Below the pieces are notes generated by a model, which did no database searches, had not been told where the DNA came from, and saw only the letters and a list, made by a program, of their open reading frames with translations. From positions 186,001 to 250,000 of the IMG/VR virus record IMGVR_UViG_3300013094_000017: 64,000 nucleotides of DNA; one strand, given 5' to 3'. Shown here piece after piece: positions 38,941-58,480 of the stretch. Numbering within the stretch: the first letter of the stretch is position 1; each line of letters opens with the position of its first letter. Both the position numbers and the translations under genes were made by a program.

Positions 38941-38941
38941 G

Positions 38942-39139: not shown

Positions 39140-39199
39140 TTTGTTTCTCCGTTGCGCTAGTGTATGTGTTATTATAGCATACACTAGCCCAAAAGTCAA

Positions 39200-39457: not shown

Positions 39458-39519
39458 TTTGTTTCTCCGTTTTGTTAGTGTAAGTGCATTATAGCGCATT
39501 TCTGCGCTATTGTCAACCA

Positions 39520-39729: not shown

Positions 39730-39794
39730 TTGTGTTGCTCCGTTTTGTTAGTGTAAGTGCATTATAGCACCCACACTAACATTTGTCAACCTCT

Positions 39795-40064: not shown

Positions 40065-40122
40065 TTGTTTCTCCATTTGTTTAGTGTAAGTGTATTATAA
40101 CACAGGTATTACCAAAAGTCAA

Positions 40123-40377: not shown

Positions 40378-40382
40378 TGCTC

Positions 40383-40706: not shown

Positions 40707-40878
40707 TTTGTTGCTCCGTTGTGTTAGTGTAAGTGCATTATAGCATAGGTATTACCTGTTGTCAACCCCTATCTTATGCCAAGAGAAAGGGCTGTGAACA
40801 ACATTATGTCCACAGCCCTTATGATAGGGTGGGCTTACCGTAAGCCACTACCTCACAAACCACACCCCACGGAGCAAC

Positions 40879-41319
40879 CTATGCAAAGTCTTTGTTATAT
40901 TGATTACGCTTTGCCTCACACTTGTCTTTAAACTCTGCCCAAGTGCCTGAAAAAATTACGTTGTCGTTGTTAGTGCCAACAGTGACAACCTCAACCTTGT
41001 TCTTGTAAACATGGTACTCATATTCCTGCCAATTGTCCACACCTGGCTTAGGTGGATACAAGTAGAACTGCCCTGGACCATCTTTAAAGTGTGCTACCAA
41101 CTGCGCGGCCAAACATCCCATACCATTGGCAACCTTTTCTGTCTTAGCACCCAAACCATTTACAATTGCAATTGGGCTAAGGAATTCAGCAAGCTCTAAA
41201 CCATGTCCTTCCATGTAGCCATCATATTGGCGATATAACTTAATGATTGGCGTGTGCTTCTCTTTGCCATTCTTTTGAGTGTAAGTGTCATAAACCCATG
41301 TTAAACTGCGTGTACCCAT
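40879..41319 (-). CDS. Early conserved phage protein (MGTRS... type)
   Basis: MGTRSLT..YRQYDGY..GHG..L, NGMGCLAAQLVAHFK. Confidence 0.7.
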   Translation of the reverse strand: MGTRSLTWVYDTYTQKNGKEKHTPIIKLYRQYDGYMEGHGLELAEFLSPIAIVNGLGAKTEKVANGMGCLAAQLVAHFKDGPGQFYLYPPKPGVDNWQEYEYHVYKNKVEVVTVGTNNDNVIFSGTWAEFKDKCEAKRNQYNKDFA

Positions 41320-41400
41320 TTTGCTTCTCCGTGTTGTTAGTGTAAGTGCATTATAGCACCCCCTAGGGGTTTTGTCAACCCCTTTAAGCGGGGTCTTACT

Positions 41401-41835
41401 CTAGGAGTCTTGTTCTTCTTCCTCGTACTCAGGTTCATCGTACGGTGGGTCAGTGTCAATAACAACCTTACCGAATGTAAGCTCAGCACCATCACTGCCT
41501 ACTGCAAACTGCTCTTCGAAGTCTACTACGTTGCCACCTTCCATCCATAGGCTGTCCGAAGTATCGTTGATGTCACTAAGTAGGATACACCCAATGCCAC
41601 CTGCATCCACAGGATACTCACGGCCTTGCTCATCCTCATAGTTACCATCACCGTGGGCGGTACTGAAGTAAGCAAAGCGAACACCATTGGCTAATTTGAA
41701 TACACCTTGTGCACCGCGCCAGTTGTCTTGTCCCTTAGGAAAGAACAGCTCACACGCTTCTTGCCACTGTGGGTGCATTACATAGCACAAGTCACCGATC
41801 CAATACTTTCCTGCTGGCATAGTTCCGTAATTCAT
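41401..41835 (-). CDS. Early hypothetical protein
   Basis: YWIGDLCYV...TAHGDG.Y...VDAGGIG. Confidence 0.7.
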   Translation of the reverse strand: MNYGTMPAGKYWIGDLCYVMHPQWQEACELFFPKGQDNWRGAQGVFKLANGVRFAYFSTAHGDGNYEDEQGREYPVDAGGIGCILLSDINDTSDSLWMEGGNVVDFEEQFAVGSDGAELTFGKVVIDTDPPYDEPEYEEEEQDS

Positions 41836-41897
41836 TTTGTTTCTCCGTTGTGTTAGTGTAAGTACATTATAACATCGGTATTACCACTTGTCAACCC

Positions 41898-42113
41898 CTA
41901 GATAGCATCAGCCTCTTCAACGTTATACTGCGTGATGTCGTCCTCAAGGATCTCAATAGCCGTCACACGCACTTCGTTATCAGTGGTCATACCGCCGAGG
42001 ACATTCTTGTAGTCCAAGAGTTCTTGTGCATACTCAAGAGCCTGGTCTCGGTTATCGAACGGTTCGTCGTGTGTGATCTCAGCACGCACTGTGGTGTAGA
42101 TGACTGTCTTCAT
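41898..42113 (-). CDS. Early hypothetical protein
   Basis: Coupled ORF. Confidence 0.6.
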   Translation of the reverse strand: MKTVIYTTVRAEITHDEPFDNRDQALEYAQELLDYKNVLGGMTTDNEVRVTAIEILEDDITQYNVEEADAI

Positions 42114-42316
42114 TCTGCTGTCTCCATTGACATCTCTTGCAAGCGGTCATACGCATTAACAAAGTCCTCGCAAAGCAGACGCATACGATGCATAGCCTGC
42201 TCTTCGCTGTCGCTTAGGCCAATGTCTTCAAAGTCGTAACCGTCTTCTAGAACATTAACGCAATCGCGCAAATCACCTAAGGTGTTTTCGAACCTGCAAT
42301 AACTCATATTAGCCAT
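42110..42316 (-). CDS. Early hypothetical protein
   Basis: MANMSYCRFENT..DL; cassette leader. Confidence 0.7.
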   Translation of the reverse strand: MANMSYCRFENTLGDLRDCVNVLEDGYDFEDIGLSDSEEQAMHRMRLLCEDFVNAYDRLQEMSMETAE

Positions 42317-42378
42317 TTTGTTTCTCCGTTGTGTTAGTGTAAGTGCATTATAGCAGGTAAAACCTGCTATGTCAACCC

Positions 42379-42579
42379 CTAATTAGCAAACTCTTCTATG
42401 CAATCTAATACTTCTTCTAACTGCATAATAACATCTTCGATGTTGTTGTGGATAGTGTAGCAGACATCCTCGTCTTCAGGAAGTGCATCTTTGTAGACTG
42501 CAAATGCTTTCTGTTGCAAGCGGTTTGCAGTGTGAAGTGCTTCGATAGCGGCTTCTAGGTGTTGTTTGGCTAGTGACAT
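42379..42579 (-). CDS. Early hypothetical protein
   Basis: Cassette leader. Confidence 0.65.
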   Translation of the reverse strand: MSLAKQHLEAAIEALHTANRLQQKAFAVYKDALPEDEDVCYTIHNNIEDVIMQLEEVLDCIEEFAN

Positions 42580-42634
42580 AATGTTTCTCCGTTGTGTTAG
42601 TGTAAAGCTATTATAGCACCAATGGTAAAACCTG

Positions 42635-42856
42635 TCAACCGATATAGTGAACTATTAATCCAACTACGCCTGTGAGCAGCATCACACCGTTCACAACGAT
42701 TAAGCTGGCCTTGCGCCATTCTATAGCTATAGCAAACCATATAGCACCGCCTACGCACAGCAACAGGGGCCCTTGTGGGTAGTATCCTAAGCTGTTAACT
42801 GCTGTGCCAACGATTAAGATCGTTGTAGCTATCCATTCTAATATTAAGATTCTCAT
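42635..42856 (-). CDS. Small 3-TM membrane protein
   Basis: Start ATG 42856; three hydrophobic helices. Confidence 0.6.
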   Translation of the reverse strand: MRILILEWIATTILIVGTAVNSLGYYPQGPLLLCVGGAIWFAIAIEWRKASLIVVNGVMLLTGVVGLIVHYIG

Positions 42857-43437
42857 ATGTCTAAAGTACTTCCTAATCCTTTGTGATAGAACAAATGTTG
42901 TCCCACCTTGGTTATATACTGCGTACGGTCTGCCCAAGCCGGCGATACATATGATGCATGATACATTAAAGCCTGCTGTAGGGGTCTTACACGTACCTTA
43001 TCCACCAGCACGCTATGCGCAATCATTTGACTCTCAGCCCACAACACACCCTTGGGCTTGTCCAACTTCTTCTTAAGTGTCCACGAGAACTGTGCCTTTG
43101 CGTGGACTACCTTGCACACACTGTTACCCCAATGGCCCGTCTTGAGTCTGTTTAAGGTTACCTGTGCAACTGCGTATTTGCCCTGCACCGGCTCCACCCC
43201 AGCTTCGTAGTATACATTCTCTGCTAGACAAGTCAAGTCATTTTTTGTGTAATGGACATTCTCATCTGTCTGCACAAGAAAAGCCTTGATCTCACGGACC
43301 TCATTGTGGACCTCAGTGATCTCACGTTGCTGGAACGACAGCAATGCTACCACTGCCGTTCCAGTTGCCGCTATGAGTAAATTACTCTTCGTCAACACTG
43401 TCTGCTTCCCACATCTCTTGGTTTTCGGAGATGGCAA
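42853..43437 (-). CDS. Cell wall hydrolase SleB/Hydrolase_2
   Basis: CLAENVYYEAG, AVAQVTLNR, QFSWT, ALMYHA, VGQHLFY; exact start uncertain. Confidence 0.85.
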   Translation of the reverse strand: MPSPKTKRCGKQTVLTKSNLLIAATGTAVVALLSFQQREITEVHNEVREIKAFLVQTDENVHYTKNDLTCLAENVYYEAGVEPVQGKYAVAQVTLNRLKTGHWGNSVCKVVHAKAQFSWTLKKKLDKPKGVLWAESQMIAHSVLVDKVRVRPLQQALMYHASYVSPAWADRTQYITKVGQHLFYHKGLGSTLDI

Positions 43438-43954
43438 AAGTATCGTCTAACTCTTGCGGTAGTTGATCACGAGCGCCTTGTGCATCACCCCAGTCTTGGT
43501 AGTAGTCATCATTGCCGTCTTGATAGATGCCAGCGAACTGCATACCACCTTCATAGTAGTAGCCAAGCACATCAAAGCCCGCTTCTTCCAAGAACGCATA
43601 AGCGCCTACTGGCGGAGCCCAAGCACTGTCAAAGTGCAGGGTGATGCTGTGGAAGCCGTCAATGGTCTCATTGATCTCGTAGTATTCATCCTCACTGCCA
43701 ACATCCCACTTGGTTCCCCAATTGCTCACGCACCAGTCATACCAAGTGCTGTAGCCATATTTCTCAAGGTTGGCTTCATATAGGGCCTGTAGTTCAGCAT
43801 CATCAGTACCTGGAGCACTGGTGATCATCAAAGCCTCGGGCACAGGAGCGAACTCCTGTAGCAATACCCCACGCTTAAAGGCCTCTTCGACACGCTGGAT
43901 CTGACCAGCATCTTTGTGAGTAAGTGTTACGATATTCTGGCACCAGTTTGGAAT
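43382..43954 (-). CDS. YubB/DUF1281-like ferredoxin-fold protein; ATT start
   Basis: (I)PNWCQNIV...WYDWCVSNWGTKWD...FDSAWAPP; in-frame TAG 4 codons upstream of ATT. Confidence 0.75.
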   Translation of the reverse strand: MPNWCQNIVTLTHKDAGQIQRVEEAFKRGVLLQEFAPVPEALMITSAPGTDDAELQALYEANLEKYGYSTWYDWCVSNWGTKWDVGSEDEYYEINETIDGFHSITLHFDSAWAPPVGAYAFLEEAGFDVLGYYYEGGMQFAGIYQDGNDDYYQDWGDAQGARDQLPQELDDTFAISENQEMWEADSVDEE

Positions 43955-44022
43955 TTTGGGTTCCTACCTTTCTTAATTTGTTAGTGTAAGTGCATTATAG
44001 CACCTTTCGGTGCTATGGTCAA

Positions 44023-44277
44023 CTAGCATTCGTAAAGTTTAACTCCAGGATCTAACTGCTTCAACTCATTCGCCGCCTGTGTTAGAAACTTAAAATTCCT
44101 ACGAACAGTGGCCGCATCTAGCTCGCCATCACAGGTCAAGTTCTCTGGTGATAGTTTGCCATCGATGATATCTGCAATGTGTTGTCGGTCTTGGGCAGTG
44201 GCCAACGACAGAGGTTTATTCCCCCATATGGCACGCCATTGGTTTTCTGCTTGGATAAAGGACTTTAGTGTTTTCAT
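44023..44277 (-). CDS. Early hypothetical protein
   Basis: LSPENLTCDGE motif; cassette leader. Confidence 0.7.
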   Translation of the reverse strand: MKTLKSFIQAENQWRAIWGNKPLSLATAQDRQHIADIIDGKLSPENLTCDGELDAATVRRNFKFLTQAANELKQLDPGVKLYEC

Positions 44278-44343
44278 TACGTTTCTCCGTGTTGTTAGTG
44301 TAAGTGCATTATAGCACCTACACTAATCTCTGTCAACCTCTAT

Positions 44344-44616
44344 CTAGGCCATCTCTACCATGTTAGCAGGCACACGCCAAGCACCTTGTGGTGTATCGAT
44401 AACGATGTTCTTAATAGCGATCTTCTTAACGGTGCCTCGAATGGTTTGACGGCTACGGCTTGAAGTAAACTGGACAGCGTCACCTACACGGAATGTTCTT
44501 AGGTTCAATCGAGCGTTACGGCTTCGGACATACTTGATTGACTCTACGATTGAGTTGATATCCGCATCAGTCAATTCTGAAGTTAGGATTAGTTCATTGA
44601 TTTTGGCTACTGACAT
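44344..44616 (-). CDS. Early SH3-like protein
   Basis: FRVGDAVQF...GTVKKI...WRVP. Confidence 0.65.
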   Translation of the reverse strand: MSVAKINELILTSELTDADINSIVESIKYVRSRNARLNLRTFRVGDAVQFTSSRSRQTIRGTVKKIAIKNIVIDTPQGAWRVPANMVEMA

Positions 44617-44669
44617 AGTCTGCTCCTTAAGTGTTTAAGTGTGTAGTATAACATCGGTATTACCAAATG

Positions 44670-44951
44670 TCAACCTAAAAAGAATTCAATCTCTTTAATA
44701 AGATCTTCCTTCACTGGCTTGTCTTCGTCGCCATGCACATACGCGGCGAACTCCTCTTCATGCCAGCGTTCAAATGTGCTAGTCATTAGCCAATTGAATA
44801 TCTTTTCTGCTGACTCCTGCTTAACCTTAGCGCGGAACGCTTCCAATGCCTTAGCACTGTCGCCTTCTGTCCAGTAGGTAAGTCCGTCTTGCTCAACTAG
44901 CAGGCCTGCTTCGATTGCTAGTTGTTCTGTTGCGGAAAAGGTTGTGCTCAT
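44670..44951 (-). CDS. Early hypothetical protein
   Basis: AAGGAG RBS. Confidence 0.6.
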   Translation of the reverse strand: MSTTFSATEQLAIEAGLLVEQDGLTYWTEGDSAKALEAFRAKVKQESAEKIFNWLMTSTFERWHEEEFAAYVHGDEDKPVKEDLIKEIEFFLG

Positions 44952-45075
44952 GCCATTACTCCTTGTTTAACCTTGCGCCAATCCCAACGTGCCTGTGTGT
45001 ATGCACGACGGCTAAGTGTAAAGCCTGGGCAGTTCTTGCAGGCCCAAGCTACGAAGTGAACTTGCTCTACGTTAC

Positions 45076-45231
45076 TCATAAGCCACAAGCCTCGTAGAAG
45101 CGTCCATAGTCAAAGCGACTGTTCATTGCCTTAGCAACATCTGCAAAAGCCTTAGCCGCTTGCTTGCGTGCATCCAAGTCTGCGATACCTGCTAGTTCTT
45201 TTGCCATTGCAATAAAGTGTTTACGTGACAT
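45076..45231 (-). CDS. Early 51-aa protein
   Basis: Manual translation MSRKHFIAMA...NSRFDYGRFYEACGL; cassette leader. Confidence 0.65.
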   Translation of the reverse strand: MSRKHFIAMAKELAGIADLDARKQAAKAFADVAKAMNSRFDYGRFYEACGL

Positions 45232-45284
45232 CTTGTGTTTCTCCGTTTTGTTAGTGTGTAGCTATTATAACACCGGTTTTACCT

Positions 45285-45530
45285 TTAGTCAACCTCAATT
45301 AACTTTAATTCGTAGAACATATCCTGCGCCAAGTCTACGCTGACAAAGTCAATAGCATACTCTTCGCCACTCTCTTCACCTGTACCGTAGAAGCGACCTG
45401 TACTGAGATCCTCTCCCAGATCTAATAAGTCCTGGTCAGTATCCCAATAGTCAATGCGGATGCCCTCGCAATTGAATGGAACATACACTGCGGCACGGCC
45501 TACGATCTCTTTAACCTTATCTAAGCTCAT
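45285..45530 (-). CDS. Early acidic hypothetical protein
   Basis: Coupled ORF. Confidence 0.6.
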   Translation of the reverse strand: MSLDKVKEIVGRAAVYVPFNCEGIRIDYWDTDQDLLDLGEDLSTGRFYGTGEESGEEYAIDFVSVDLAQDMFYELKLIEVD

Positions 45531-45913
45531 ACCTTCTCCTTTGCAACAATCTTAGGTTCACGTCCACTGCCATCGCTGATGTAGCCTAACACTAAGGTCT
45601 CCATAGCCCGCTTAGCCTCTTGCACGGCTTCCCAAGCAAGGTCTTCTGCGGTGCCGTCTTTGAATACTTCCATGGCATCCTCGTACAAGAAGCCACCTAC
45701 ATAAGCATCACCTAGCTCGATGTCCTTGTAGTAGGCCACAGCGCGAAGCATGAACCAATCTAATTCATACGCATCAATCTTGCGACAAAGGTCTTCAACG
45801 TCTGTTACAGTGTCATCAAAGCAGTCTCTGGGGCTAATATCTTCCCAGGACTTTTCGATCTTAACAGTAAAGCCATCCATTTCAAGCTGGCCTAGTGTTT
45901 CCCAATGGCGCAT
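45527..45913 (-). CDS. Early hypothetical protein
   Basis: Cassette leader. Confidence 0.65.
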   Translation of the reverse strand: MRHWETLGQLEMDGFTVKIEKSWEDISPRDCFDDTVTDVEDLCRKIDAYELDWFMLRAVAYYKDIELGDAYVGGFLYEDAMEVFKDGTAEDLAWEAVQEAKRAMETLVLGYISDGSGREPKIVAKEKV

Positions 45914-45967
45914 ATCATTCTCCGTTTGTTTAGTTTAAGTGCATTATAGCACAGGTATTACCAAAGG

Positions 45968-46129
45968 TCAATCCCAAAATTTATTAATAATCTCTTCTGC
46001 TTCCCTCATAGCACCATCAAAGTCACCAGCACCTAAGCAGAAGATCTCTCCGCTGTAGTGTAAGCACCAGCAGTTCAAGTGTAGATCAAATTCTACATCG
46101 TAACCAGTTTCTAATACATGTACAGCCAT
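45968..46129 (-). CDS. Early small protein
   Basis: AAGGAG RBS before ATG 46129. Confidence 0.55.
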   Translation of the reverse strand: MAVHVLETGYDVEFDLHLNCWCLHYSGEIFCLGAGDFDGAMREAEEIINKFWD

Positions 46130-46307: not shown

Positions 46308-46447
46308 AGTGTACTCCTTGTTGTTAGTGTGTAAACATTATAGCGTAGGTTTTTCCATTTGTCAAGCATTATATTGGTAATATTTTGGTTGACAGGTATT
46401 ACCAGCGATGCTATACTACGTATACACTAACAACACGGAGAACTAAA

Positions 46448-46856: not shown

Positions 46857-46933
46857 TGGTGCTCCGTCAGGGATTCGAACCCTGCCTCCCACGTTATGAG
46901 CATGGTACTCTCTACCTAGTGAGTTACCAGAGC
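46857..46933 (-). tRNA. tRNA with CAU anticodon (elongator Met or Ile2)
   Basis: GCTCTGG acceptor, ACTC/GAGT D stem, CCATG-CTCATAA-CGTGG, CAGGG-TTCGAAT-CCCTG, encoded ACCA. G1-C72 pair and no 3GC anticodon stem, so not initiator-type. sigma70 promoter upstream. Confidence 0.9.
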
Positions 46934-48144: not shown

Positions 48145-48680
48145 GCAGCGGGGTCACTACATATATAGTGTTATACTATAAGATACATTATACACTATAT
48201 ACACTAGTAAGTCAATGTATACTGTATATAGTATAGAATATAAGCTATTAAGATATAGTGAGTATAGTATATAGTATAAGAGATCTATATATACTATACA
48301 GCGGGGTCACTACATATACAGTAATATAGTATACAGTAATACAGTATACTGTATATACGGTGGGACCTATCGATATATAAGAGGGTATTAGGCAAGGTCA
48401 GAACCGCTAGGCCAAGGTCTAAATATGGTCAAGAATGGTGGCCAAATGGTGGATTCATGGGAGGTTTTTCTGTGAGATTATGGTAAAATCACTATAGAAA
48501 CTGTGGGAAAATTGCTGCAAAATTTTTTGAAGGTGGGTGGGGAGAGAGGCTATGCTAGAATACTTCCCCAATGGTTCACCTATTTTCTCATACCTTGTTC
48601 ACCTATTTTCTCATACCTTGTTCACCTATTTTCTCATACCCTGTTCTTACTATTCTCACAGTTCTCATGCAGCGGGGTCA
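48145..48680. repeat. Dispersed (G)CAGCGGGGTCA(CTACATATA) repeat x3
   Basis: Copies at 48145-48165, 48299-48318, 48669-48680. Confidence 0.85.
48574..48642. repeat. 23-bp tandem repeat x3 (GTTCACCTATTTTCTCATACCTT)
   Basis: Read directly; third copy has one substitution. Confidence 0.9.
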
Positions 48681-49215
48681 TACTGTATATAGTATATATA
48701 GTAATAAGTTCCCACTATAGCAAAAGCTCTTTAACTAGGTGTATAGTTCTAGCATACTCTCTTATACTGTATATAGTGTGTATACACTGCATGTATTAGA
48801 TATACTGCATATAAGGTTATATGTATTAGATATAGTGTATATAGTGTATAGTATTGACTTCTAGTAGTATATAGTGTATACTGACTGTATGTATAGATTA
48901 TGAGTAGCAGAGTATATATAGATACCAGCACTTATACATAGTCTATTAATATTGTCCTCACCCACTCAAGGATCTACTATGTTTGCCATATGGTCAGCTA
49001 TTATACTATTATTGCTTAATGGTTCTATACTCAGTGCAGTATTTGTTTTAACCATATACATGATCAAGTGCGGTTAATGAACCTATTAGATTTCGTATAG
49101 TTTAATTTATTCACTGTATATAAACTCATAGTTTAGTTATACGTATATATTTAAACTCTCAAGATCTTCCTCTAACTCCTAGAGTATCTAGTAAATATCC
49201 ATTTGGATCCTGCCT

Positions 49216-49425: not shown

Positions 49426-49487
49426 CCTCTTGACCCCGTGAGTCATTTAGTCTATACTATAAGTGACTTCACTTAAGGAAAATTCTC

Positions 49488-49644: not shown

Positions 49645-49893
49645 ATGACTTGGCGTAGGGATCTTGATGTACTGCAAAAGAACTTCACCAATTGGATCTT
49701 CACCAATTGGATGCTGATACCTCTTGTTAATAAGGCCAGTGGACTAGCTGATGTTAATCAAAGGATGCAGGCCCTGTACCCTGGTCCCTATAGTGTAATA
49801 GAAAAATTTGATCCCCGTCGAGGGTTGTTTGTTCTAGACCTAGAGTTTGCTAGCCCTCAAGCTCGTACTTTATGGCTACTCAAGTGGAGTTAA
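49645..49893 (+). CDS. LKW-motif family protein
   Basis: Ends FASPQARTLWLLKWS. Confidence 0.65.
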   Translation: MTWRRDLDVLQKNFTNWIFTNWMLIPLVNKASGLADVNQRMQALYPGPYSVIEKFDPRRGLFVLDLEFASPQARTLWLLKWS

Positions 49894-49894
49894 T

Positions 49895-50137
49895 ATGAAA
49901 TACTTTTGGCCCGGACCCGGTGCAGATCCTGTACTCACCCACAGATTTAAAGTTAGCCTAGTCACTGATGAAATGTGGCTGTGGTGCGAACAATATGATA
50001 GTGGTCTGAGTGTAGACCGTGACTTTAGACGTTGGAATATTGAGTTTGGCCAGAACCGAGGCCGTGACCATGATGTCATACAGTTTGAATGGGAGCAGGC
50101 GGCAATTATGTTTGCTCTAAAGTTTGAGACCCTATAA
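49895..50137 (+). CDS. LKW-motif family protein
   Basis: Ends FEWEQAAIMFALKFETL. Confidence 0.65.
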   Translation: MKYFWPGPGADPVLTHRFKVSLVTDEMWLWCEQYDSGLSVDRDFRRWNIEFGQNRGRDHDVIQFEWEQAAIMFALKFETL

Positions 50138-50523
50138 TGTGGGATAAGATTCAGGACTGGTATCTAACCTGGCGCACTGGCCGACCTCGCCAGGTACGTG
50201 AGTTTGAAGCATGGGCAGAAGTTACAATAGTCAAGCGTGCTAACACAGCCGAGGCTATGTTTAGGAACTTCAAGTATGTGTTTACAGTTGACTACAACAA
50301 GTTCTTTTTTGATGCTGGCATGTTTATGGAGTTAGACCCAGGAACTAAACCATATATGTTTCCACAGCGTGAGTTAGGTGATAACTTAGTCTATGCTCAC
50401 CTGCGTGGAGAGGAAATGCCAATTGGCCTGTTTCTTATAACTGACTTAGGTGATGAAGATAGACTTTATGTTGCCACAAACAACGGCAAGGATGCTACTA
50501 TGATAGCACTATTATACGGTTGA
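50137..50523 (+). CDS. LKW-motif family protein (divergent)
   Basis: Ends TNNGKDATMIALLYG. Confidence 0.6.
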   Translation: MWDKIQDWYLTWRTGRPRQVREFEAWAEVTIVKRANTAEAMFRNFKYVFTVDYNKFFFDAGMFMELDPGTKPYMFPQRELGDNLVYAHLRGEEMPIGLFLITDLGDEDRLYVATNNGKDATMIALLYG

Positions 50524-50815
50524 CTTTTTTGGTAATACCGTGTATACTTAATTTTTGTTAATAGAAAGCTCTATATGAAAAAGATCTCTCGACTAAGTGA
50601 TTTCCCTTATTCGATTCTTAAAACGAGAAAAGGACCTAACATGGTTCAGATTATGGCAAGGAAACTAACATGCGAGAAATATTTGCACTAACAGTATTGT
50701 TTATGGTGTTTATTGGAATTCCATTGATCTTATACTGGCACTACATTACCCTAGCCTCTAAAGCAGAATCCGATATTGAACAGTTTACTCGTCAACTACG
50801 TGAAGAAAGAAACAA

Positions 50816-51138: not shown

Positions 51139-51396
51139 ATGCGTCATAGAACTAAAACCTTACGCGAAGGCCGTTGGTACAAACTATTCAAAAGTACTAA
51201 TCCTAAAACTGGTCGATCCAGCTATACCATACAGGTTGATGTGTATAATTTACGAGCGTGGGATAATGATGTGATACGCAAGCATTTTGACCCAGCAGGC
51301 AATCGTGGTAGTAAACACGGCACACGTTGGAAGTACGGTAATAAAGAAACGGCAGAAAAAGTATTGCTAATGGCAATGATAAAATTTGGAGAATAA
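51139..51396 (+). CDS. Hypothetical protein
   Basis: GAGGT RBS. Confidence 0.6.
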   Translation: MRHRTKTLREGRWYKLFKSTNPKTGRSSYTIQVDVYNLRAWDNDVIRKHFDPAGNRGSKHGTRWKYGNKETAEKVLLMAMIKFGE

Positions 51397-51661: not shown

Positions 51662-51823
51662 TGGAAATGTTTTTTGGATTTGCCATGGGCCTGGGAACAG
51701 GGGTATGGGCAATGAATTATCTTTGGGAAGAAAAAATCCGAGAGATTATTCGTACAGGCGAGTATACCAGTCTGGTCAACCCTCCAGTTGACAAACCCTA
51801 ACATCTAGTATATACTATACAAT

Positions 51824-53442: not shown

Positions 53443-53664
53443 ATGGCTTATGTTGACGTTGAAGTAGAAGTAGAGTTAGATATGTTCAGTGATAAGGAAC
53501 TTATCGAAGAATGTAAATTACGTGGAATGTCTGTTGATGGGGGTGTAGAACATTACTCTGCTCATGATGTCATCCGTGACATCTATAATGCCAAGGCCCG
53601 TGGACAAGACTACGAGCCTTTGTTACGTGATCTATTCTATCGCACACTTGGACGGGTATGCTAA
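53443..53664 (+). CDS. Hypothetical protein
   Basis: VEVELDMFSDKELIEECKLRG...LFYRTLGR. Confidence 0.65.
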   Translation: MAYVDVEVEVELDMFSDKELIEECKLRGMSVDGGVEHYSAHDVIRDIYNAKARGQDYEPLLRDLFYRTLGRVC

Positions 53665-55265
53665 CTGATATAGAAATTAATCAAGGGTACAAGCCCTTAA
53701 AGCTCTCAAAGCTGGCCTCTGGGCTAGGCATTGGGGGTAGCGTACAAGAGTGGGGGCCAAATAAGGCCAAGATAGCATTTGATGAAGTTAAGAGCCTTAC
53801 CCAGGGTAAATTGATCTTAGTCACAGCCATCACCCCCACCCCCGCAGGTGAGGGTAAGACCACAACCACCATAGGCCTAGCTGATGGGCTACGCAAATTA
53901 AACTACTCAAGCATAGTATGCCTACGTGAGCCAGCCCTGGGCCCGGTGTTTGGTATGAAGGGTGGGGCTACCGGGGGTGGTCATGCCCAGGTCTACCCTA
54001 TGGAGGATATCAACTTACACTTTACAGGTGACTTCCACGCAGTTGCCTGCGCACACAACTTACTCAGCAGTATGATTGATAATCACTTACATTGGGGCAA
54101 TGCGCTACGGTTAGACACTAGCAAGATCACATGGCGCAGAGTCAGCGAAATGAATGACCGTAGCTTACGCAGTACAGTAGTAGGGTTAGGAGCTCATAAC
54201 AGCATCACCCGTGAAGAGGGCTTTGATATAGTAGTAGCCTCTGAGGTAATGGCTATATTGTGTCTAGCTGAAGATTTCAAAGACCTAAAGAAACGTCTGG
54301 GTAAGATCACAGTTGGGTATACCTTAGATGGTAAGCCCGTTACAGCTAAACAGTTAAAGGCGCATGGGGCTATGGCAGCCTTACTTAAAGATGCTGTCAA
54401 CCCTAACCTAGTACAGACTTTAGAAGGTACCCCAGCACTAGTTCATGGCGGCCCATTTGCTAACATAGCACACGGATGTAATAGTGTTATTGCTACCAAG
54501 TTAGGTTTGAAACTTGCTGACTATGTGGTAACAGAAGCAGGCTTTGGTGCTGACCTAGGTGCTGAGAAGTTTATTAATATTAAGTGTCGTAAGAGTGGAT
54601 TACGGCCAGATGCAGTAGTCCTTGTGGCCACTGTTAGAGCAATTAAGTACTGGGGTAATTATGATAATTTGGACAAACATATGGCTAACATCAAAGGTTG
54701 GTATAACTTACCTTGTATCGTGGCTATTAATCGTTTTGCAGACGATTCTGATGAAGATATTGCTGAACTAATAGAACATTGTCGAGAAAGAGATGTTGAA
54801 GCAGTAGAGTGTACACATTTTGCAGATGGCGGGGTAGGTGCTCAAGAACTAGCACACGAAGTTGTCTTGGCCATTGACCAATCAAGCAAGCAGATGGAAT
54901 TGACCTATGCTGATGAAGATACATTATGGACTAAGATAAATCATATTGCCAAGAGAATATACGGTGCCGAAGGTGTTCATATGGATGCTAAAGTATCAGC
55001 ACAGTTAGATCTACTACAGAAACATTATGGAAAGTATCCAATCTGTATTGCCAAAACACAGAGCAGTTTCAGTGATGATCCTACAGATAAGAACTCAGCA
55101 ACAGACATACACACACTAACTGTGCGTGAGCTACGCCTGTGTACCGGAGCAGAGTTTATTGTGGCAGTATGCGGTAACATCATGACCATGCCAGGACTAC
55201 CAGAACGGCCAAACGCTGAACGTATTGGTATTGACCGACAAGGGCGTATTGAGGGATTAGACTAA
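53658..55265 (+). CDS. fhs: Formate--tetrahydrofolate ligase
   Basis: TAITPTPAGEGKTTT, LREPALGPVFGMKGGATGGG, INLHFTGDFHA, GPFANIAHGCNSV, EAGFGADLGAEKF, IMTMPGLP. Confidence 0.97.
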   Translation: MLTDIEINQGYKPLKLSKLASGLGIGGSVQEWGPNKAKIAFDEVKSLTQGKLILVTAITPTPAGEGKTTTTIGLADGLRKLNYSSIVCLREPALGPVFGMKGGATGGGHAQVYPMEDINLHFTGDFHAVACAHNLLSSMIDNHLHWGNALRLDTSKITWRRVSEMNDRSLRSTVVGLGAHNSITREEGFDIVVASEVMAILCLAEDFKDLKKRLGKITVGYTLDGKPVTAKQLKAHGAMAALLKDAVNPNLVQTLEGTPALVHGGPFANIAHGCNSVIATKLGLKLADYVVTEAGFGADLGAEKFINIKCRKSGLRPDAVVLVATVRAIKYWGNYDNLDKHMANIKGWYNLPCIVAINRFADDSDEDIAELIEHCRERDVEAVECTHFADGGVGAQELAHEVVLAIDQSSKQMELTYADEDTLWTKINHIAKRIYGAEGVHMDAKVSAQLDLLQKHYGKYPICIAKTQSSFSDDPTDKNSATDIHTLTVRELRLCTGAEFIVAVCGNIMTMPGLPERPNAERIGIDRQGRIEGLD

Positions 55266-55507
55266 TGGCAGTTGTTTGGGAAAATAGAGAAAAGAGTAGA
55301 TTCTTAGTATCAGGACCTTTCGATGAAAGTATGCCTAATCTATATGTTATTATTGCTGATTTTGGTTGGTATATCGAGCATACTGACGAAATAGAATATT
55401 GGATGGATCAGCATTTGCCTCAAGGAAGACATCATCGAGAGGGGATGGTTATATCGTTTGATAATCCCAAAGACTGTTCGCATTTCTTATTAAGGTGGAT
55501 GGTTTGA
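55265..55507 (+). CDS. LKW-motif family protein
   Basis: Ends FDNPKDCSHFLLRWMV. Confidence 0.65.
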   Translation: MAVVWENREKSRFLVSGPFDESMPNLYVIIADFGWYIEHTDEIEYWMDQHLPQGRHHREGMVISFDNPKDCSHFLLRWMV

Positions 55508-55812
55508 GTCATTCTGCCTATAGAGAAATTACAAAACCTTATTGGGATCATCATGACGATGTATATGCCGATGAAGTAGAAAATGGTTGGGAGCCAAAGT
55601 TTACATCTTGGTATCAACACACTATTGTAAACGACATTGCCCGTGGTGGATTTGATTGGCATTTTGATACCTACGAACAGATTGCCAAATGGATTCCTGA
55701 GAACGTGGAAGATTGGGCTAACAATGCACAATGGCTCAAGGTCAGTGATTGCATCTATGTTAGATTTAAGCGTGAAAAAGATTATGTTTGGTTTATGTTG
55801 AAGTGGGGCTAA
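55495..55812 (+). CDS. LKW-motif family protein
   Basis: Ends FKREKDYVWFMLKWG. Confidence 0.65.
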   Translation: MDGLSHSAYREITKPYWDHHDDVYADEVENGWEPKFTSWYQHTIVNDIARGGFDWHFDTYEQIAKWIPENVEDWANNAQWLKVSDCIYVRFKREKDYVWFMLKWG

Positions 55813-55813
55813 T

Positions 55814-56029
55814 ATGCCAAGAAACGGCGAATACGAATTGTTTACCTATAAAGGTACAATTGTCTGCATGGATGACCCGGATATCCCGAGAATAGAATTC
55901 TCTGAAGAAATTGCCGAGTGGATACGTGAGCAAGACCATTTAATGTGGCGTTCATTATCACCGCCCAATCAAGATATATTCTACCTAAAACCTAAACTAT
56001 ATATGATGTGGAAGTTAAAGTGGGTATGA
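55814..56029 (+). CDS. LKW-motif family protein
   Basis: Ends LKPKLYMMWKLKWV. Confidence 0.65.
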   Translation: MPRNGEYELFTYKGTIVCMDDPDIPRIEFSEEIAEWIREQDHLMWRSLSPPNQDIFYLKPKLYMMWKLKWV

Positions 56030-56229
56030 ATGGTTTCCAACAATCAGTACAATCAATAAAGGAAAATTTTGCTTGGTCTACAATCTGTAGCAGCCGAGAC
56101 TTTAGACATCAAGCTCAATGGGTTATTGATAATCTAGGCCCGCAAGGTATTAGATGGGAATATTCTCAAACAAAATACTACTTAAAAACAGAACAAGACA
56201 AATTATTATTTCTATTGAGGTGGAGTTAA
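56026..56229 (+). CDS. LKW-motif family protein
   Basis: Ends LKTEQDKLLFLLRWS. Confidence 0.65.
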   Translation: MNGFQQSVQSIKENFAWSTICSSRDFRHQAQWVIDNLGPQGIRWEYSQTKYYLKTEQDKLLFLLRWS

Positions 56230-56414
56230 TGCTAATACCTGTTGAAACTGTACATAAGGCTGTTAGGGATCTCGAATCTCACGGGGATATAACCCAAACT
56301 ATGTTTGAAGATCGTTATCGCTGTAGTCTTTGTCCCAGCGATAGTCTAGAGCATTATGATGTTATTTTTGATACACCTCAAGCTGCTATTATGTTTATAA
56401 TGAAATGGTCATGA
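56229..56414 (+). CDS. LKW-motif family protein
   Basis: Ends FDTPQAAIMFIMKWS. Confidence 0.65.
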   Translation: MLIPVETVHKAVRDLESHGDITQTMFEDRYRCSLCPSDSLEHYDVIFDTPQAAIMFIMKWS

Positions 56415-56415
56415 G

Positions 56416-56739
56416 ATGAAAACAATTTGGTTAAAGAGTCCTATTGCAGAACTATGGTGGAAGTTCTGGCCTGGGAAGATCATTGACCTACCGATGCCAG
56501 ATGGCTTTATGTCTGAAATTGTATGGGGTGTTGTAACAGTAGGAACAAATATGTCTGAGCAGTATTACAATATGCTGGTCTGGATGGAAGAACATGTAGG
56601 AGTAAAAGGACGTGATTGGAATTGGCAAATTCATACAACTACTGAATTATTACACTATAAATCTGAAACTAGATTAGCTATTAAACTTCGACGTGGTAAA
56701 GAAAAACAAGCAAGTATAATAGCATTAAAATTCTCATGA
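56416..56739 (+). CDS. LKW-motif family protein
   Basis: WMEEHVGVKGRDWNW...KQASIIALKFS. Confidence 0.65.
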   Translation: MKTIWLKSPIAELWWKFWPGKIIDLPMPDGFMSEIVWGVVTVGTNMSEQYYNMLVWMEEHVGVKGRDWNWQIHTTTELLHYKSETRLAIKLRRGKEKQASIIALKFS

Positions 56740-57038
56740 TATTAAATCGTACACAATTTGCCATACACTTTAACAATCTGCAACCTGGACTAGGTAATCG
56801 CAGTAGTGCCTTATGGAGTCCCGAAGAATATCTTAGAGTAAACAAATCTGTGGCATTTGTTTGTGTTAAACCTATTAACGTATCGGCGATAGGAAAAATA
56901 GTATATTGGAACTGGTGCAAGAAACACTTACAAGGAAAAGTAGCCTGCTACAGCAGCGATGATATTAACGAAGAAGAATGGTGGGGATTTACTAATCCCG
57001 ATGATATTGTATTTTGGATGCTAAGATGGGCGAACTAA
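56736..57038 (+). CDS. LKW-motif family protein
   Basis: Ends FTNPDDIVFWMLRWAN. Confidence 0.65.
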   Translation: MILNRTQFAIHFNNLQPGLGNRSSALWSPEEYLRVNKSVAFVCVKPINVSAIGKIVYWNWCKKHLQGKVACYSSDDINEEEWWGFTNPDDIVFWMLRWAN

Positions 57039-57316
57039 TAAACTCAAATACATTCGCTGATAATACAGAGAACTCTAAAGACAGAGAAGATTGGTTACTT
57101 AGACGTAACAGATACTGGATGAGATTGCGTGCAGTCCATCGTGAGTTTAATGCTCTTAAAGGTGGGAATTACTCAGCAGGTGACGAACTTTTTGTCAAAT
57201 ACCTGCAAGATACCTACGGAGTTCAAATGCATGTTGAAAACACCCATATTACTGCCCTCTACAATGTAGTAGACAAATCAAAATATCTGTTATTCTTAAT
57301 GAAATTTGATGTATGA
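57026..57316 (+). CDS. LKW-motif family protein
   Basis: Ends VVDKSKYLLFLMKFDV. Confidence 0.65.
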   Translation: MGELINSNTFADNTENSKDREDWLLRRNRYWMRLRAVHREFNALKGGNYSAGDELFVKYLQDTYGVQMHVENTHITALYNVVDKSKYLLFLMKFDV

Positions 57317-57705
57317 GTTTTGGCGGCTTTTCGTTACCGTTTATAGGCACTAAAGAGGAATATCAAGAGCTAATGGCCAAACAAGAAATAGCAAAACGTA
57401 CACTCAATCTGTATAAGAATCTATTATGGCGGTATCGTCTTAGGACTGAGATCTCTATCAAGTGGCCCATTGGGTGGACACCACAGGATCATTTGGGCAA
57501 TAGTGCTGAAAGCTCAGACCCTAATGTTTGGTACCGTGATTGGTTTGAACAGCATGCTGGTCGTCAAGGATGGGCATGGGATTGGCGTATTGGTCAAACG
57601 CATACTTACGAACTTGATCCATTAGTTGAGGTGCATGATACATTACGCATTAAGTTTCGTGACCCAAAAATAGCAACCTTGTTTATATTAACTTGGGTAA
57701 GATAA
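57313..57705 (+). CDS. LKW-motif family protein
   Basis: WFEQHAGRQGWAWDW...FRDPKIATLFILTWVR. Confidence 0.65.
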   Translation: MSFGGFSLPFIGTKEEYQELMAKQEIAKRTLNLYKNLLWRYRLRTEISIKWPIGWTPQDHLGNSAESSDPNVWYRDWFEQHAGRQGWAWDWRIGQTHTYELDPLVEVHDTLRIKFRDPKIATLFILTWVR

Positions 57706-58017
57706 ATGGCAAAAAGTAGTTTTGAAGAGAGTCTTGAGGATATGATAATTCAGGAATGGTCTGAAAGTTGGGATCATGCCGTCTTAGATGAGCTATGGGG
57801 AAATACACCTAAGACCTACAGCATAAAAAAATCTTGGCGTGATCGCAGAGGCAGACAGATGCATCGCATTTCGGTCAGCGGTCGTGTGCTGGAATGGTTA
57901 GAAACTACACAGTCACAATACGGTAAATCAAATCCAGAATGGTGGAAGTTCCAAAATGAGATCAACATCACAGATAAGATGTTAAGTATGTTGATACTAA
58001 GATGGGGTAAGGAATGA
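57706..58017 (+). CDS. LKW-motif family protein
   Basis: Ends ITDKMLSMLILRWGKE. Confidence 0.65.
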   Translation: MAKSSFEESLEDMIIQEWSESWDHAVLDELWGNTPKTYSIKKSWRDRRGRQMHRISVSGRVLEWLETTQSQYGKSNPEWWKFQNEINITDKMLSMLILRWGKE

Positions 58018-58283
58018 TGTATAAAGTAACAAAATTAGATGGTAGATTTGCTGGATCAGATCGATACAAGTATTACATCAGCCCTAAGGGAAGAACTCCG
58101 TTTAATATAGTTAAACCTTTGTTCAACGATTGGCGCACATGGTGTTGGGCCACATGGGGACCAGCTAGCGAACGTGATTGGTATGCAAATGTTGACTGGG
58201 CATGGGATACTGAACACAATCATCTACGCATCTATCTGCGCAGTGATAAACAATTATCTATGTTCCACCTCAAGTGGGGTTAA
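58014..58283 (+). CDS. LKW-motif family protein
   Basis: WCWATWGP...LRSDKQLSMFHLKWG. Confidence 0.65.
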   Translation: MMYKVTKLDGRFAGSDRYKYYISPKGRTPFNIVKPLFNDWRTWCWATWGPASERDWYANVDWAWDTEHNHLRIYLRSDKQLSMFHLKWG

Positions 58284-58291
58284 ATAGTCGT

Positions 58292-58480
58292 ATGAGCAAC
58301 TACAACAAAGTACAGAATCAGATCAAACTGTTAGAAATCAAATTGAATAAATTTAGATTATACGAGCAAGAGATAAGATCAACAGATCAATGGAATACGA
58401 GACGTATTGATGATTGTGTTAAATCTCAGGAGAAATTAGTTGAGATGATCAAGTACTGGCGTGGTAAATTGCCTAGCTAG
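58292..58480 (+). CDS. Small late coiled-coil protein
   Basis: TTAAATA at 58280-58286. Confidence 0.5.
   Translation: MSNYNKVQNQIKLLEIKLNKFRLYEQEIRSTDQWNTRRIDDCVKSQEKLVEMIKYWRGKLPS

What the first reader, a model, noticed from the sequence alone, without database searches (positions are those of the whole stretch)
55265..58283. Tandem array of 11 translationally coupled proteins sharing only a C-terminal F-x-L-[KR]-W motif
Seen: 11 consecutive 61-130 aa ORFs with overlapping or abutting stop/start codons. Their N-termini are highly divergent, but each ends within 0-4 residues of a motif of the form [FLY]-x-[DNST]-x-x-[DQ]-x-x-x-F-x-L-[KR]-[WF] (FLLRW, FMLKW, WKLKW, FLLRW, FIMKW, IALKF, WMLRW, FLMKF, FILTW, LILRW, FHLKW). 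Several also carry W-x-x-E-[HN]-x-G...W. Inference: an expanded paralogue family with a variable front end and a conserved docking C-terminus. This fits an effector arsenal (anti-defence, RNA/DNA-binding or adaptor) in which many variable modules plug into one shared partner. I know of no characterised family with this motif.
Basis: partly seen in the sequence, partly recalled or inferred. Interest (0 to 1): 0.82.

Follow-up and report, generated by a model that had tools for sequence, protein, structure and literature searches.

The report
Tandem array of unnamed small phage proteins
Eleven back-to-back small genes in a large uncultured phage belong to a big, undescribed virus-only protein family that other phages carry in arrays of up to about 38 copies, and each gene's last codons also serve as the ribosome-binding site of the next gene; what the proteins do is still unknown.

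Summary
Eleven co-oriented ORFs (55265-58283) follow a phage formate-tetrahydrofolate ligase gene, with junctions from -13 to +1 nt. They share a C-terminal domain of about 45-55 residues, not just a 5-residue tail. AlphaFold models of g4 and g8 both give a helix-hairpin-helix core; g4 adds a leading strand. Neither model has a significant PDB match.

No Pfam, PHROG, NCBIfam or PADLOC family matches, and four tblastn queries found nothing in 50,697 cultured-phage records. A profile search found 327 clusters (50% identity) of 43-140 aa proteins with the domain at the extreme C-terminus. In 56 IMG/VR loci I counted 521 copies (median 8, maximum 26 per 12 kb or less); one 14-kb contig carries about 38.

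The Arg of the terminal L-R-W is AGG in 75% of cases, against 9% elsewhere in the same genes (p = 3e-109). The next ATG usually overlaps the stop, so each tail carries a Shine-Dalgarno-like sequence for the next gene.

The array lies in a block with over-represented sigma-70-like promoters. Orthologues are under purifying selection, but copy number and order differ between close relatives (11 versus 4). My best guess is a battery of early small binder proteins for host takeover or counter-defence. The "docking tail" idea is not supported.

The parts
53658..55265 (+). Formate-tetrahydrofolate ligase gene (535 aa) directly upstream of the array. Its stop overlaps the ATG of g1 (TAATG).
   Evidence: ORF. 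PF01268 on the 85%-identical orthologue in L001/L002. Junction sequence.
55265..55507 (+). g1, 80 aa, tail FLLRW-MV. Family member with an orthologue in relative L002 (77% aa identity).
   Evidence: Independent HMM E = 6.9e-8. Orthologue.
55504..55812 (+). g2, 102 aa from TTG 55504 (TTGA overlap with g1's stop; GTG 55495 is an alternative start). Tail FMLKW-G.
   Evidence: Independent HMM E = 4.1e-10. P0015, 102 aa. Sequence.
55814..56029 (+). g3, 71 aa, tail WKLKW-V. Marginal by profile.
   Evidence: Independent HMM E = 3.8e-3. Tail motif.
56026..56229 (+). g4, 67 aa, tail FLLRW-S encoded AGGTGGAGTTAATG. The member closest to the family consensus.
   Evidence: HMM E = 2.8e-15. AlphaFold2 pLDDT 79, about 90 in the domain: strand 17-20, helix 23-37, strands 44-47 and 50-53, helix 56-66.
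56229..56414 (+). g5, 61 aa, tail FIMKW-S. Its best match in L002 is the 70-aa gene at 7483-7695.
   Evidence: HMM E = 1.3e-5. Local alignment score 83 against 24-44.5 for the other ten genes.
56416..56739 (+). g6, 107 aa, tail IALKF-S, with WMEEHVGVKGRDWNW.
   Evidence: HMM E = 2.4e-8.
56736..57038 (+). g7, 100 aa, tail WMLRW-AN. The weakest member, from the 'EEWWGF' sub-branch that also occurs in arrays L007 and L008.
   Evidence: HMM E = 0.058. Similar tails in L007 6474-6785 and L008 4562-4885.
57026..57316 (+). g8, 96 aa, tail FLMKF-DV, from the 'WG[IV]...V-x-D-x-x-K-Y-x-L-F-L-L-K-F' sub-branch.
   Evidence: hhalign of the sub-branch against the main family: 95.6%, E = 1.3e-8. AlphaFold2 with its own 12-sequence alignment, pLDDT 76: helix 54-64, strands 66-71 and 74-81, helix 84-93.
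57313..57705 (+). g9, 130 aa, tail FILTW-VR, with WFEQHAGRQGWAWDW.
   Evidence: HMM E = 4.3e-11.
57706..58017 (+). g10, 103 aa, tail LILRW-GKE. Orthologue in L002 (62% aa identity, dN/dS 0.09).
   Evidence: HMM E = 8.2e-4..
58014..58283 (+). g11, 89 aa (88 aa from ATG 58017), tail FHLKW-G. Orthologue in L002 (81% aa identity, dN/dS 0.06).
   Evidence: HMM E = 7.3e-12..
49645..49893 (+). Additional family member outside the array, 82 aa, tail WLLKW-S.
   Evidence: Independent HMM E = 0.013.
49895..50137 (+). Additional family member, 80 aa, tail FALKF-ETL, one base after the previous gene.
   Evidence: Independent HMM E = 2.7e-7..
51139..51396 (+). Possible distant member, 85 aa, tail MAMIKF-GE. 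Its L002 orthologue ends LALLKW-GA.
   Evidence: HMM E = 0.07-0.2. Not significant.
51788..51816 (+). Nearest upstream copy of the promoter-like motif TTGAC-N18-TATACT. Other + strand copies are at 46389, 48854, 49430 and 50520.
   Evidence: Nine exact copies in the window against 0.11 expected..

Best explanation
Shown: the 11 ORFs are real, co-oriented genes for members of a large, unnamed, apparently virus-only family of small soluble proteins. Each protein is essentially one C-terminal mini-domain of about 45-55 residues with a predicted helix-hairpin-helix core (an extra leading strand in g4), and its near-invariant residues are three Trp, a Gly, a Phe and a Leu. A short, non-conserved N-terminal extension precedes it.

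Shown statistically: the last codons (L-[R/K]-W-x-stop, typically AGG-TGG-NNA-TGA) also carry a Shine-Dalgarno-like sequence, and the next gene's start usually overlaps the stop.

Inferred: each gene is therefore a self-contained cassette that can be added, lost or moved without breaking downstream translation. The array is read as one polycistronic early transcript from host-type promoters further upstream, running through the FTHFS gene.

Inferred, least certain: the proteins are a battery of small binders made early in infection. Each paralogue would use its own surface and N-terminal extension to neutralise or redirect a different host protein (host takeover or counter-defence).
For: The genes are real. 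Orthologues in a related phage give dN/dS of 0.06-0.09 for g10 and g11 (g1: 77% aa identity, dS saturated). 23 orthologue pairs between three other relatives give a median of 0.16.

The family is real. Evidence comes from the independent HMM, hhalign, 327 representative clusters, and 521 copies in 56 IMG/VR loci, 516 with the domain at the C-terminus and 517 co-oriented. L007 carries about 38 in a row.

The fold is shared. Two AlphaFold runs on separate alignments give the same helix-hairpin-helix core.

The tail is dual-coded. AGG is 205/274 of the motif Arg codons against 115/1270 elsewhere in the same genes (p = 3e-109). 338/417 members have exactly one residue after [KR][WFY], and the nearest ATG lies at -4 (ATGA) in 205 cases. 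The last 17 nt pair with the anti-SD at -4.7 against -2.1 kcal/mol.

Early context. TTGAC-N18-TATACT occurs 9 times against 0.11 expected, in two divergent small-gene blocks.

Cassette turnover. There are 11 genes here and 4 in the relative whose FTHFS is 85% identical. In L010-L012, identical genes sit next to genes with dS above 2, and order is reshuffled with duplicated copies.

The proteins look soluble: no hydrophobic segments, pI 4.8-9.5.
Against: There is no functional evidence at all. No characterised homologue exists, neither model has a significant PDB match, and no partner has been identified.

Orthologue dN/dS is not raised over neighbouring genes (0.156 against 0.150), so there is no sign of a residue-level arms race. 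That control set includes spurious antisense ORFs.

The promoter motif is only a consensus match, and no copy lies directly in front of the array.

Host, expression timing and the host's anti-SD sequence are unknown. In the window itself only 2 of the 4 motif Arg codons are AGG.
Confidence: 0.45

Rival explanations
1. One reading: variable N-terminal effector modules are all delivered to one shared partner by a conserved C-terminal docking motif.
For: The conserved part is always at the extreme C-terminus (516/521). N-termini differ in length and sequence. About 1% of members elsewhere carry a recognisable borrowed module, a capsid-protein segment, in front of the domain.
Against: Median length is 78 aa, with a median of only 29 residues before helix 1. 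The shortest members (43-55 aa) have no front module. The conserved residues are aromatic or aliphatic and fit a domain core. Tail conservation is partly explained by its Shine-Dalgarno role.
Confidence: 0.15
2. They are small nucleic-acid-binding regulators whose helix-hairpin-helix core acts like the recognition helix, wing and C-terminal helix of a winged-helix protein.
For: The top Foldseek PDB hits for the g8 model are nearly all winged-helix regulators (ArsR/SmtB, RTP, MarR, RosR). An ArsR cluster also appears among the Atlas structural neighbours.
Against: None of these hits is significant (best E = 0.33, TM about 0.3). The g4 model gives different, equally insignificant hits. The models lack the three-helix HTH core. 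Net charge is mixed, and six of the 11 are acidic to near neutral.
Confidence: 0.12
3. They act in capsid assembly or as decoys for host sensors of phage structural proteins. The domain would be a carrier for peptides copied from core phage proteins.
For: The N-terminal 50 residues of P0162 match gp23-type major capsid proteins of 329 phages at 41-48% identity. The match covers residues 85-134 of a gp23 homologue. About 10 of 808 family sequences, from at least 7 contigs, carry this stretch. The Lit protease is known to be triggered by the Gol peptide of T4 gp23 (PMC8829019). That Gol lies at about residues 93-122 is from my memory.
Against: Only about 1% of members carry it, and none of the 11 window genes does. 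The genomic context looks early rather than late or structural. A similar-looking terminase Walker-A stretch is not significant (E = 0.068 pairwise, no tblastn hit).
Confidence: 0.1
4. The tail motif is purely a nucleotide-level ribosome-binding signal, and the ORFs are unrelated or non-coding.
For: Strong AGG-TGG bias in the tail and overlapping starts.
Against: Similarity extends over 40-55 residues. Lys encoded AAA, which gives no Shine-Dalgarno-like sequence, is accepted at the same position (78 of 143 Lys codons). Confident models share a core. Orthologues are under purifying selection.
Confidence: 0.02

Closest known systems
Small accessory ORFs in the plastic early regions of T4-type phages, for example the T4 internal protein IPI* that blocks a restriction system (from my own knowledge, not tested here)
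   Same: Small, soluble, non-essential-looking proteins in a T4-type myovirus. They vary in presence between close relatives and lie in blocks of small genes with host-type promoters.
   Different: No sequence or fold match was found. T4 internal proteins share an N-terminal capsid-targeting leader, whereas here the N-termini are unrelated and the C-terminal domain is shared. No T4-type family reaches dozens of tandem paralogues.
Bacterial polyimmunity loci: tandem arrays of small divergent immunity proteins such as the SUKH and Imm families (from my own knowledge)
   Same: Runs of many co-oriented, highly divergent paralogues of 70-130 aa built on one compact fold, with rapid gain and loss.
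   Different: Those are cellular and sit next to polymorphic toxin genes. Here the family seems virus-only, no toxin gene is adjacent, and there is no Pfam match to any Imm or SUKH family.
Multigene families of large eukaryotic DNA viruses, such as baculovirus bro and African swine fever virus MGF (from my own knowledge)
   Same: Expanded, copy-number-variable viral paralogue families thought to deal with host factors.
   Different: Different viruses and folds. Those genes are not translationally coupled cassettes.
Ferredoxin-like / RRM-like beta-alpha-beta-beta-alpha-beta fold
   Same: The g4 model has the first five elements in the same order. Atlas structural neighbours of a related cluster include the ferredoxin-like YajQ and SPOR domains at TM 0.44-0.47.
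   Different: There is no fourth strand. g8 has a long helix in place of strand 1. No Foldseek PDB hit is significant.
Translational coupling through overlapping stop/start (ATGA) with a Shine-Dalgarno sequence inside the upstream gene
   Same: The same general mechanism, common in phage operons.
   Different: Here the signal is built into a conserved protein motif and repeated at every unit of a paralogue array, with an about 8-fold shift to the AGG codon at one residue.

Membership tests
Unnamed 'LRW-tail' mini-domain family (defined here by alignments A3, A4 and A6) | Match to a family profile trained without any window sequence | tested here: met
   eight of 11 genes at E = 3e-15 to 1e-5 among 713 ORFs. 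g10, g8 and g3 score 8e-4 to 4e-3 and g7 scores 0.058, so g7 is weak. The g8 sub-branch matches at hhalign 95.6%.
Unnamed 'LRW-tail' mini-domain family | Domain at the extreme C-terminus, ending [FWLI]-x-[LM]-[KR(T)]-[WF] plus 0-4 residues | tested here: met
   All 11 genes. Family-wide, 516/521 copies.
Unnamed 'LRW-tail' mini-domain family | Predicted helix-hairpin-helix core | tested here: met
   g4 and g8 were modelled from separate alignments. The other nine were not modelled.
Unnamed 'LRW-tail' mini-domain family | Co-oriented tandem arrays with overlapping or abutting stop and start | tested here: met
   Window junctions. Other arrays.
Any curated family in Pfam-A, PHROGs v4, NCBIfam 20 or PADLOC-DB | Score above the family cut-off or a significant E-value | tested here: not met
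   Only chance-level hits, for example NDUF_B5 at 17 bits against a cut-off of 25.
Winged helix-turn-helix regulators (ArsR/SmtB-like) | Significant structural match and a three-helix HTH core before the wing | tested here: not met
   Best Foldseek E = 0.33, TM about 0.3. The g4 model has only two long helices (23-37 and 56-66) and no three-helix HTH core.
Ferredoxin-like / RRM-like fold | beta-alpha-beta-beta-alpha-beta order with a four-stranded sheet | tested here: inconclusive
   g4 shows the first five elements. No fourth strand and no significant PDB hit.
T4 internal proteins (IPI-III) | Shared N-terminal capsid-targeting leader (as I recall it); sequence similarity | tested here: not met
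   The N-termini of the 11 share no leader. tblastn of g9 and g11 against 50,697 phage records found no match.
Polyimmunity-locus immunity proteins (SUKH, Imm families) | Pfam match to an immunity family; adjacent polymorphic toxin gene | tested here: not met
   No such Pfam hit in 148 family members. The neighbours are FTHFS, cell-wall hydrolase and NT5C.
Known anti-defence proteins (anti-CRISPR, Ocr and similar) | Match to a curated anti-defence family | not testable with these tools
   No anti-defence library is on hand. PADLOC holds defence systems only.

The most novel reading that the evidence does not exclude
The family is a cassette system for making and shuffling many small decoy or inhibitor proteins. 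A common Trp-core scaffold with a built-in ribosome-binding tail lets the phage string together dozens of units. The front ends, in some lineages copied from the phage's own major capsid protein (the segment that I recall contains the Gol trigger of the Lit protease), would jam host immune sensors that recognise conserved phage proteins.
Probability: 0.1. Interest if true: 0.85.

Novelty: new variant of a known kind. Interest (0 to 1): 0.62.

Why it matters
Large environmental phages devote kilobases to this family, up to about 10 kb and 38 genes in one contig, yet it has no name, no solved structure and no known function. A family this amplified, kept under purifying selection and reshuffled between close relatives is a prime candidate for host-takeover or counter-defence functions. 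Those are the functions that have yielded anti-CRISPRs and other useful inhibitors. The dual-coded tail is a clean, testable example of a protein motif and a translation signal evolving together, and it may explain how such arrays grow and shrink without losing expression. At the least, the family merits a database entry so that hundreds of "hypothetical proteins" can be linked.

Tried and rejected
- **Curated libraries.** Pfam, PHROGs, PADLOC and NCBIfam scans of window members and of consensus-like relatives found nothing.
- **Cultured phages.** A blastn search of the region matched only within the FTHFS gene. tblastn of g9, g11, P0025 and P0050 found no match.
- **Solved structures.** The PDB sequence profile search gave only chance hits. 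Foldseek against the PDB gave nothing significant for either model.
- **Locus finders.** The search for related loci failed with the broad alignments A2 and A4, and with A7 on genome contigs, because no column stretch was conserved enough.
- **Cellular genomes.** One narrow DNA pattern (D-A-T-M-F-x-L-R-W) scanned over 185,579 species genomes gave 5 hits. None has the domain beyond the pattern. This suggests a virus-only family, but the test is narrow.
- **Mimicry inside the window.** The N-terminal parts of the 11 genes do not resemble other window proteins; the best E-value is 0.012.
- **Recent duplication.** The array has no DNA-level repeats longer than 30 nt, so I rejected recent duplication.
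- **Late promoters and RNAs.** The T4 late-promoter motif TATAAATA is not enriched. Rfam finds only the tRNA.
- **Positive selection.** Orthologue dN/dS is no higher than in neighbouring genes.
- **Terminase-like N-terminus.** The resemblance in some long members is not significant.
- **Literature.** Five full-text searches found no description of the family or of the metagenome project. A sixth concerned the Gol/Lit lead.

Full report
**Context.** The window comes from a large T4-type myovirus. It encodes a tail sheath, a T4-type large terminase, gp32, a RecA/UvsX-like protein, a DnaB-type helicase, a primase and tail tube proteins. The terminase is 55% identical to that of Pseudomonas jumbo phage PA5oct and 48% to that of Agrobacterium phage Atu_ph07. 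The proteins of the array occur on a 259-kb contig, and close relatives occur on 200-488-kb metagenome scaffolds.

**The observation.** Eleven + strand ORFs of 61-130 aa fill 55265-58283 with no intergenic space.
- Using the database start calls for g2 (TTG 55504) and g8 (ATG 57026), the junctions are -4, +1, -4, -1, +1, -4, -13, -4, 0 and -4 nt.
- g1's ATG overlaps the stop of the upstream formate-tetrahydrofolate ligase gene.
- A tail pattern [FWLIYM]-x-[LMI]-[KRT]-[WF] plus 0-3 residues is found in 15 of 713 stop-to-stop ORFs, against about 1.9 expected. Thirteen of the 15 lie in two clusters.
- The observation therefore holds and is far beyond chance.

**What is shared.** Anchoring the sequences on the tail shows a common region of 45-60 residues:
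- a helix carrying a Trp (W-x-x-E-x-x-G);
- a G-x-x-G loop;
- a Trp-containing strand;
- a second strand (h-x-h-x-F);
- a capping acidic residue and a final helix, F-x-L-[KR]-W.

Pairwise similarity is weak (16-36% identity to g1). A leave-one-out profile built from the other ten recovers only six of the 11 at E of 0.002 or better. I therefore looked outside the window.

**The wider family.** A profile of 19 domain sequences was searched against 1.84 billion representative proteins.
- It found 327 clusters at E of 1e-3 or better. Apart from three repeat artefacts at the top, these are proteins of 43-140 aa with the match ending at or within a few residues of the C-terminus.
- Their consensus is sharper than in the window: E-I-x-x-W-C-x-E-x-F-G-P-x-G-x-x-x-R-W ... 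I-Y-F-[KR]-D-E-K-D-A-T-L-F-L-L-R-W.
- An HMM trained on 118 of these, none close to a window protein, retrieves g4, g11, g9, g2, g6, g1 and g5 at E = 3e-15 to 1e-5 among the window's 713 ORFs. It also retrieves the ORF at 49844-50137.
- g10, g8 and g3 score 8e-4 to 4e-3, and g7 scores 0.058, with noise starting at 0.014.
- The g8 sub-branch aligns to the main family by hhalign with 95.6% probability, E = 1.3e-8. g7 has look-alike tails in other arrays.
- Two more members lie 5 kb upstream (49645-49893 and 49895-50137), and two further ORFs are possible distant members.

**Fold.** Two AlphaFold2 runs used separate alignments.
- g4, with a 148-sequence family alignment, gives mean pLDDT 79 and about 90 across the domain. 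The elements are strand 17-20, helix 23-37, strands 44-47 and 50-53, and helix 56-66.
- g8, with only its own 12-sequence sub-branch alignment, gives pLDDT 76. It has the same helix-hairpin-helix core (54-64, 66-71, 74-81, 84-93), preceded by a long helix instead of the first strand.
- The near-invariant positions (W32, G38, W44, F62, L64 and W66 in g4) look like core and capping residues. That is my inference, because the model coordinates could not be inspected.
- Foldseek finds no significant PDB match for either model. The best E-values are 0.69 and 0.33, and g8's top hits are winged-helix regulators at TM about 0.3.
- Against predicted viral structures, g4 hits mostly "uncharacterized protein [uncultured Caudovirales phage]" entries.

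**Is it known?**
- No Pfam, PHROG, NCBIfam or PADLOC family matches the window genes or consensus-like relatives.
- tblastn of four members against 50,697 cultured-phage records finds nothing.
- A narrow DNA pattern scanned over 185,579 bacterial and archaeal species genomes gave five chance hits and no true member.
- A similar peptide pattern in IMG/VR gave 58 confirmed hits.
- Five literature searches found no description.
- I conclude that the family is undescribed and, as far as tested, confined to uncultured viruses.

**Arrays elsewhere.**

| Source | Members found |
|---|---|
| 56 IMG/VR loci, 614 kb in total | 521 at E of 0.01 or better: median 8 per locus of 12 kb or less, maximum 26, runs of up to 14 adjacent |
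| L007, a 14-kb contig | about 38 in a row |
| L005, a 328-kb NCBI assembly | 6 at E of 1e-3 or better, plus weaker candidates |
| L010-L012, three 39-278-kb relatives | 13-16 per 12 kb |

- Of the 521 IMG/VR copies, 516 have the domain at the C-terminus and 517 lie on the same strand as the seed gene.
- Median protein length is 78 aa, with a median of 29 residues before helix 1. Most members are little more than the domain.

**Evolution.**
- The relative whose FTHFS is 85% identical has only four genes in the same position. They correspond to g1, g5, g10 and g11, and a 213-aa gene absent from the window follows them.
- g10 and g11 have dN/dS below 0.1. For g1, dS was saturated.
- Among L010-L012, 23 family orthologue pairs have median dN/dS of 0.16, no higher than neighbouring ORFs. 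That control set is imperfect.
- In those loci, identical genes sit beside genes with dS above 2, positions are reshuffled and some copies are duplicated.
- The window array has no DNA repeats longer than 30 nt, so its paralogues are old.
- The picture is purifying selection on each gene together with turnover of whole cassettes.

**The tail has two jobs.**
- In five loci, the last 17 nt of family genes pair with the canonical anti-Shine-Dalgarno sequence at -4.7 kcal/mol, against -2.1 for other ORF ends (p = 6e-10).
- In 417 non-identical IMG/VR members, the Arg of the final [KR]-W is AGG in 205 of 274 cases. Elsewhere in the last 60 codons of the same genes it is 115 of 1270 (odds ratio 30, p = 3e-109).
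- 338 of the 417 have exactly one residue after the aromatic. The nearest ATG is at -4 (ATGA) in 205 cases and at -1 in 41.
- The typical gene end is therefore AGG-TGG-NNA-TGA: a Shine-Dalgarno-like AGGTGG, two bases, and a start codon overlapping the stop.
- Lys encoded AAA is also accepted (78 of 143). A basic residue is thus required at the protein level, and the codon choice adds a nucleotide-level signal.
- In the window, g1 and g4 use AGG; g7 and g10 use AGA; g2, g3 and g11 use AAG.
- I infer that every unit brings the translation signal for its neighbour, which would let arrays expand, contract and reshuffle without loss of expression. This is testable with synonymous changes.

**Expression context.**
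- The motif TTGAC-N18-TATACT occurs nine times in the window, against 0.11 expected. Four copies are on the - strand at 34.4-44.7 kb and five on the + strand at 46.4-51.8 kb.
- The + strand copies at 49430, 50520 and 51788 lie in gaps before genes.
- This looks like two divergent early regions read by host RNA polymerase. The + block runs to about 58.5 kb, where a convergent gene begins.
- No copy lies immediately before the array, so the array would be read through from upstream, via the FTHFS gene. This is an inference from sequence only.

**Function.**
- Nothing points to catalysis, because the conserved residues look structural.
- The proteins have no hydrophobic segments and a mixed pI of 4.8-9.5.
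- The most economical reading is a set of small binder proteins made early, each with its own surface. This matches what is known of small early phage proteins in general.
- I give this 0.45. That figure is mostly confidence in the anatomy and the coupling, and much less in the function.

The rivals, with my confidence in each:

| Rival | Confidence |
|---|---|
| Winged-helix-like nucleic-acid binders | 0.12 |
| A capsid-related or decoy role | 0.10 |
| A purely nucleotide-level motif | 0.02 |

**A lead seen outside the window.**
- About 10 of 808 family sequences, from at least seven contigs, begin with a stretch that matches the major capsid proteins of 329 T4-type phages at 41-48% identity.
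- For P0162 the match covers residues 85-134 of a gp23 homologue.
- As I recall, the Gol peptide of T4 gp23 lies at about residues 93-122. Gol triggers the Lit abortive-infection protease (PMC8829019).
- This is the only hint that the front ends can be functional modules, and it motivates the decoy hypothesis in the novel case.
- None of the 11 window genes has such a stretch.

**Verdict.** The finding is genuine. It is a new, large, virus-restricted family of small proteins in tandem, translationally coupled cassettes. A compact fold is predicted and the function is unknown.

Noticed in passing
window 53658-55265 (+): The phage encodes a full-length formate-tetrahydrofolate ligase (535 aa, PF01268 on the orthologue). 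It sits directly in front of the array and is joined to it by a TAATG overlap. The same gene, 85% identical, is in the related phage L001/L002, so it appears to be a folate one-carbon auxiliary metabolic gene.
   Followed up: partly
window 34482-34510, 34862-34890, 38742-38770, 44645-44673 (-); 46389-46417, 48854-48882, 49430-49458, 50520-50548, 51788-51816 (+): There are nine exact copies of TTGAC-N18-TATACT, against 0.11 expected. They are arranged as two divergent sets around 45-46 kb, which suggests host-type early promoters for two blocks of small genes.
   Followed up: partly
P0162, P0053, P0083, P0133; L007:3716-4000; L061:5737-6153; L037:4826-5197; L046:163-561; L036:7059-7469: Some family members in other phages start with a copy of the conserved segment of the T4-type major capsid protein (residues 85-134 of a gp23 homologue, '...VGVQPM..P...IF..R..Y'), fused to the family domain. 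From memory, this segment includes the Gol peptide that triggers the Lit protease.
   Followed up: partly
L022:3079-3549, L017:7010-7501: The longest family members (152-157 aa) share an N-terminal module. Its 'QYQ...GRQTGKS' stretch lines up with the Q-motif and Walker A of the window's large terminase. The similarity is not significant (pairwise E = 0.068, no tblastn hit).
   Followed up: partly
L002:8272-8913 versus window 58283-58292: The related phage has a 213-aa gene between the last array gene and the conserved 62-aa coiled-coil gene. The window has only 8 bases there.
   Followed up: no
window 48311-48357 and 48574-48646: Short tandem repeats lie in a stretch of about 1 kb with no convincing genes, between the 92-aa - strand gene and the + strand small-gene block. 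A 23-nt unit occurs 3.2 times at 98% identity, and a 15-nt unit occurs 2.9 times.
   Followed up: no
window 46857-46933 (-): A single tRNA-Met (CAT) gene lies between the two divergent small-gene blocks.
   Followed up: no
window 4538-7876 (+): The tail sheath protein is unusually long at 1112 aa. Only its last 100 residues match the sheath C-terminal domain.
   Followed up: no
window 33000-46000 (-): A second block of many small - strand ORFs has higher G+C (about 45% against about 40%) and negative GC skew. It contains no member of the family.
   Followed up: no
L010-L012 (for example L011:5147-5353 and 5971-6204; L011:5562-5792 and 6616-6867): Related phages carry two copies of the same family gene within one array. 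They also have identical genes next to genes with dS above 2, which points to recent duplication and cassette exchange.
   Followed up: partly
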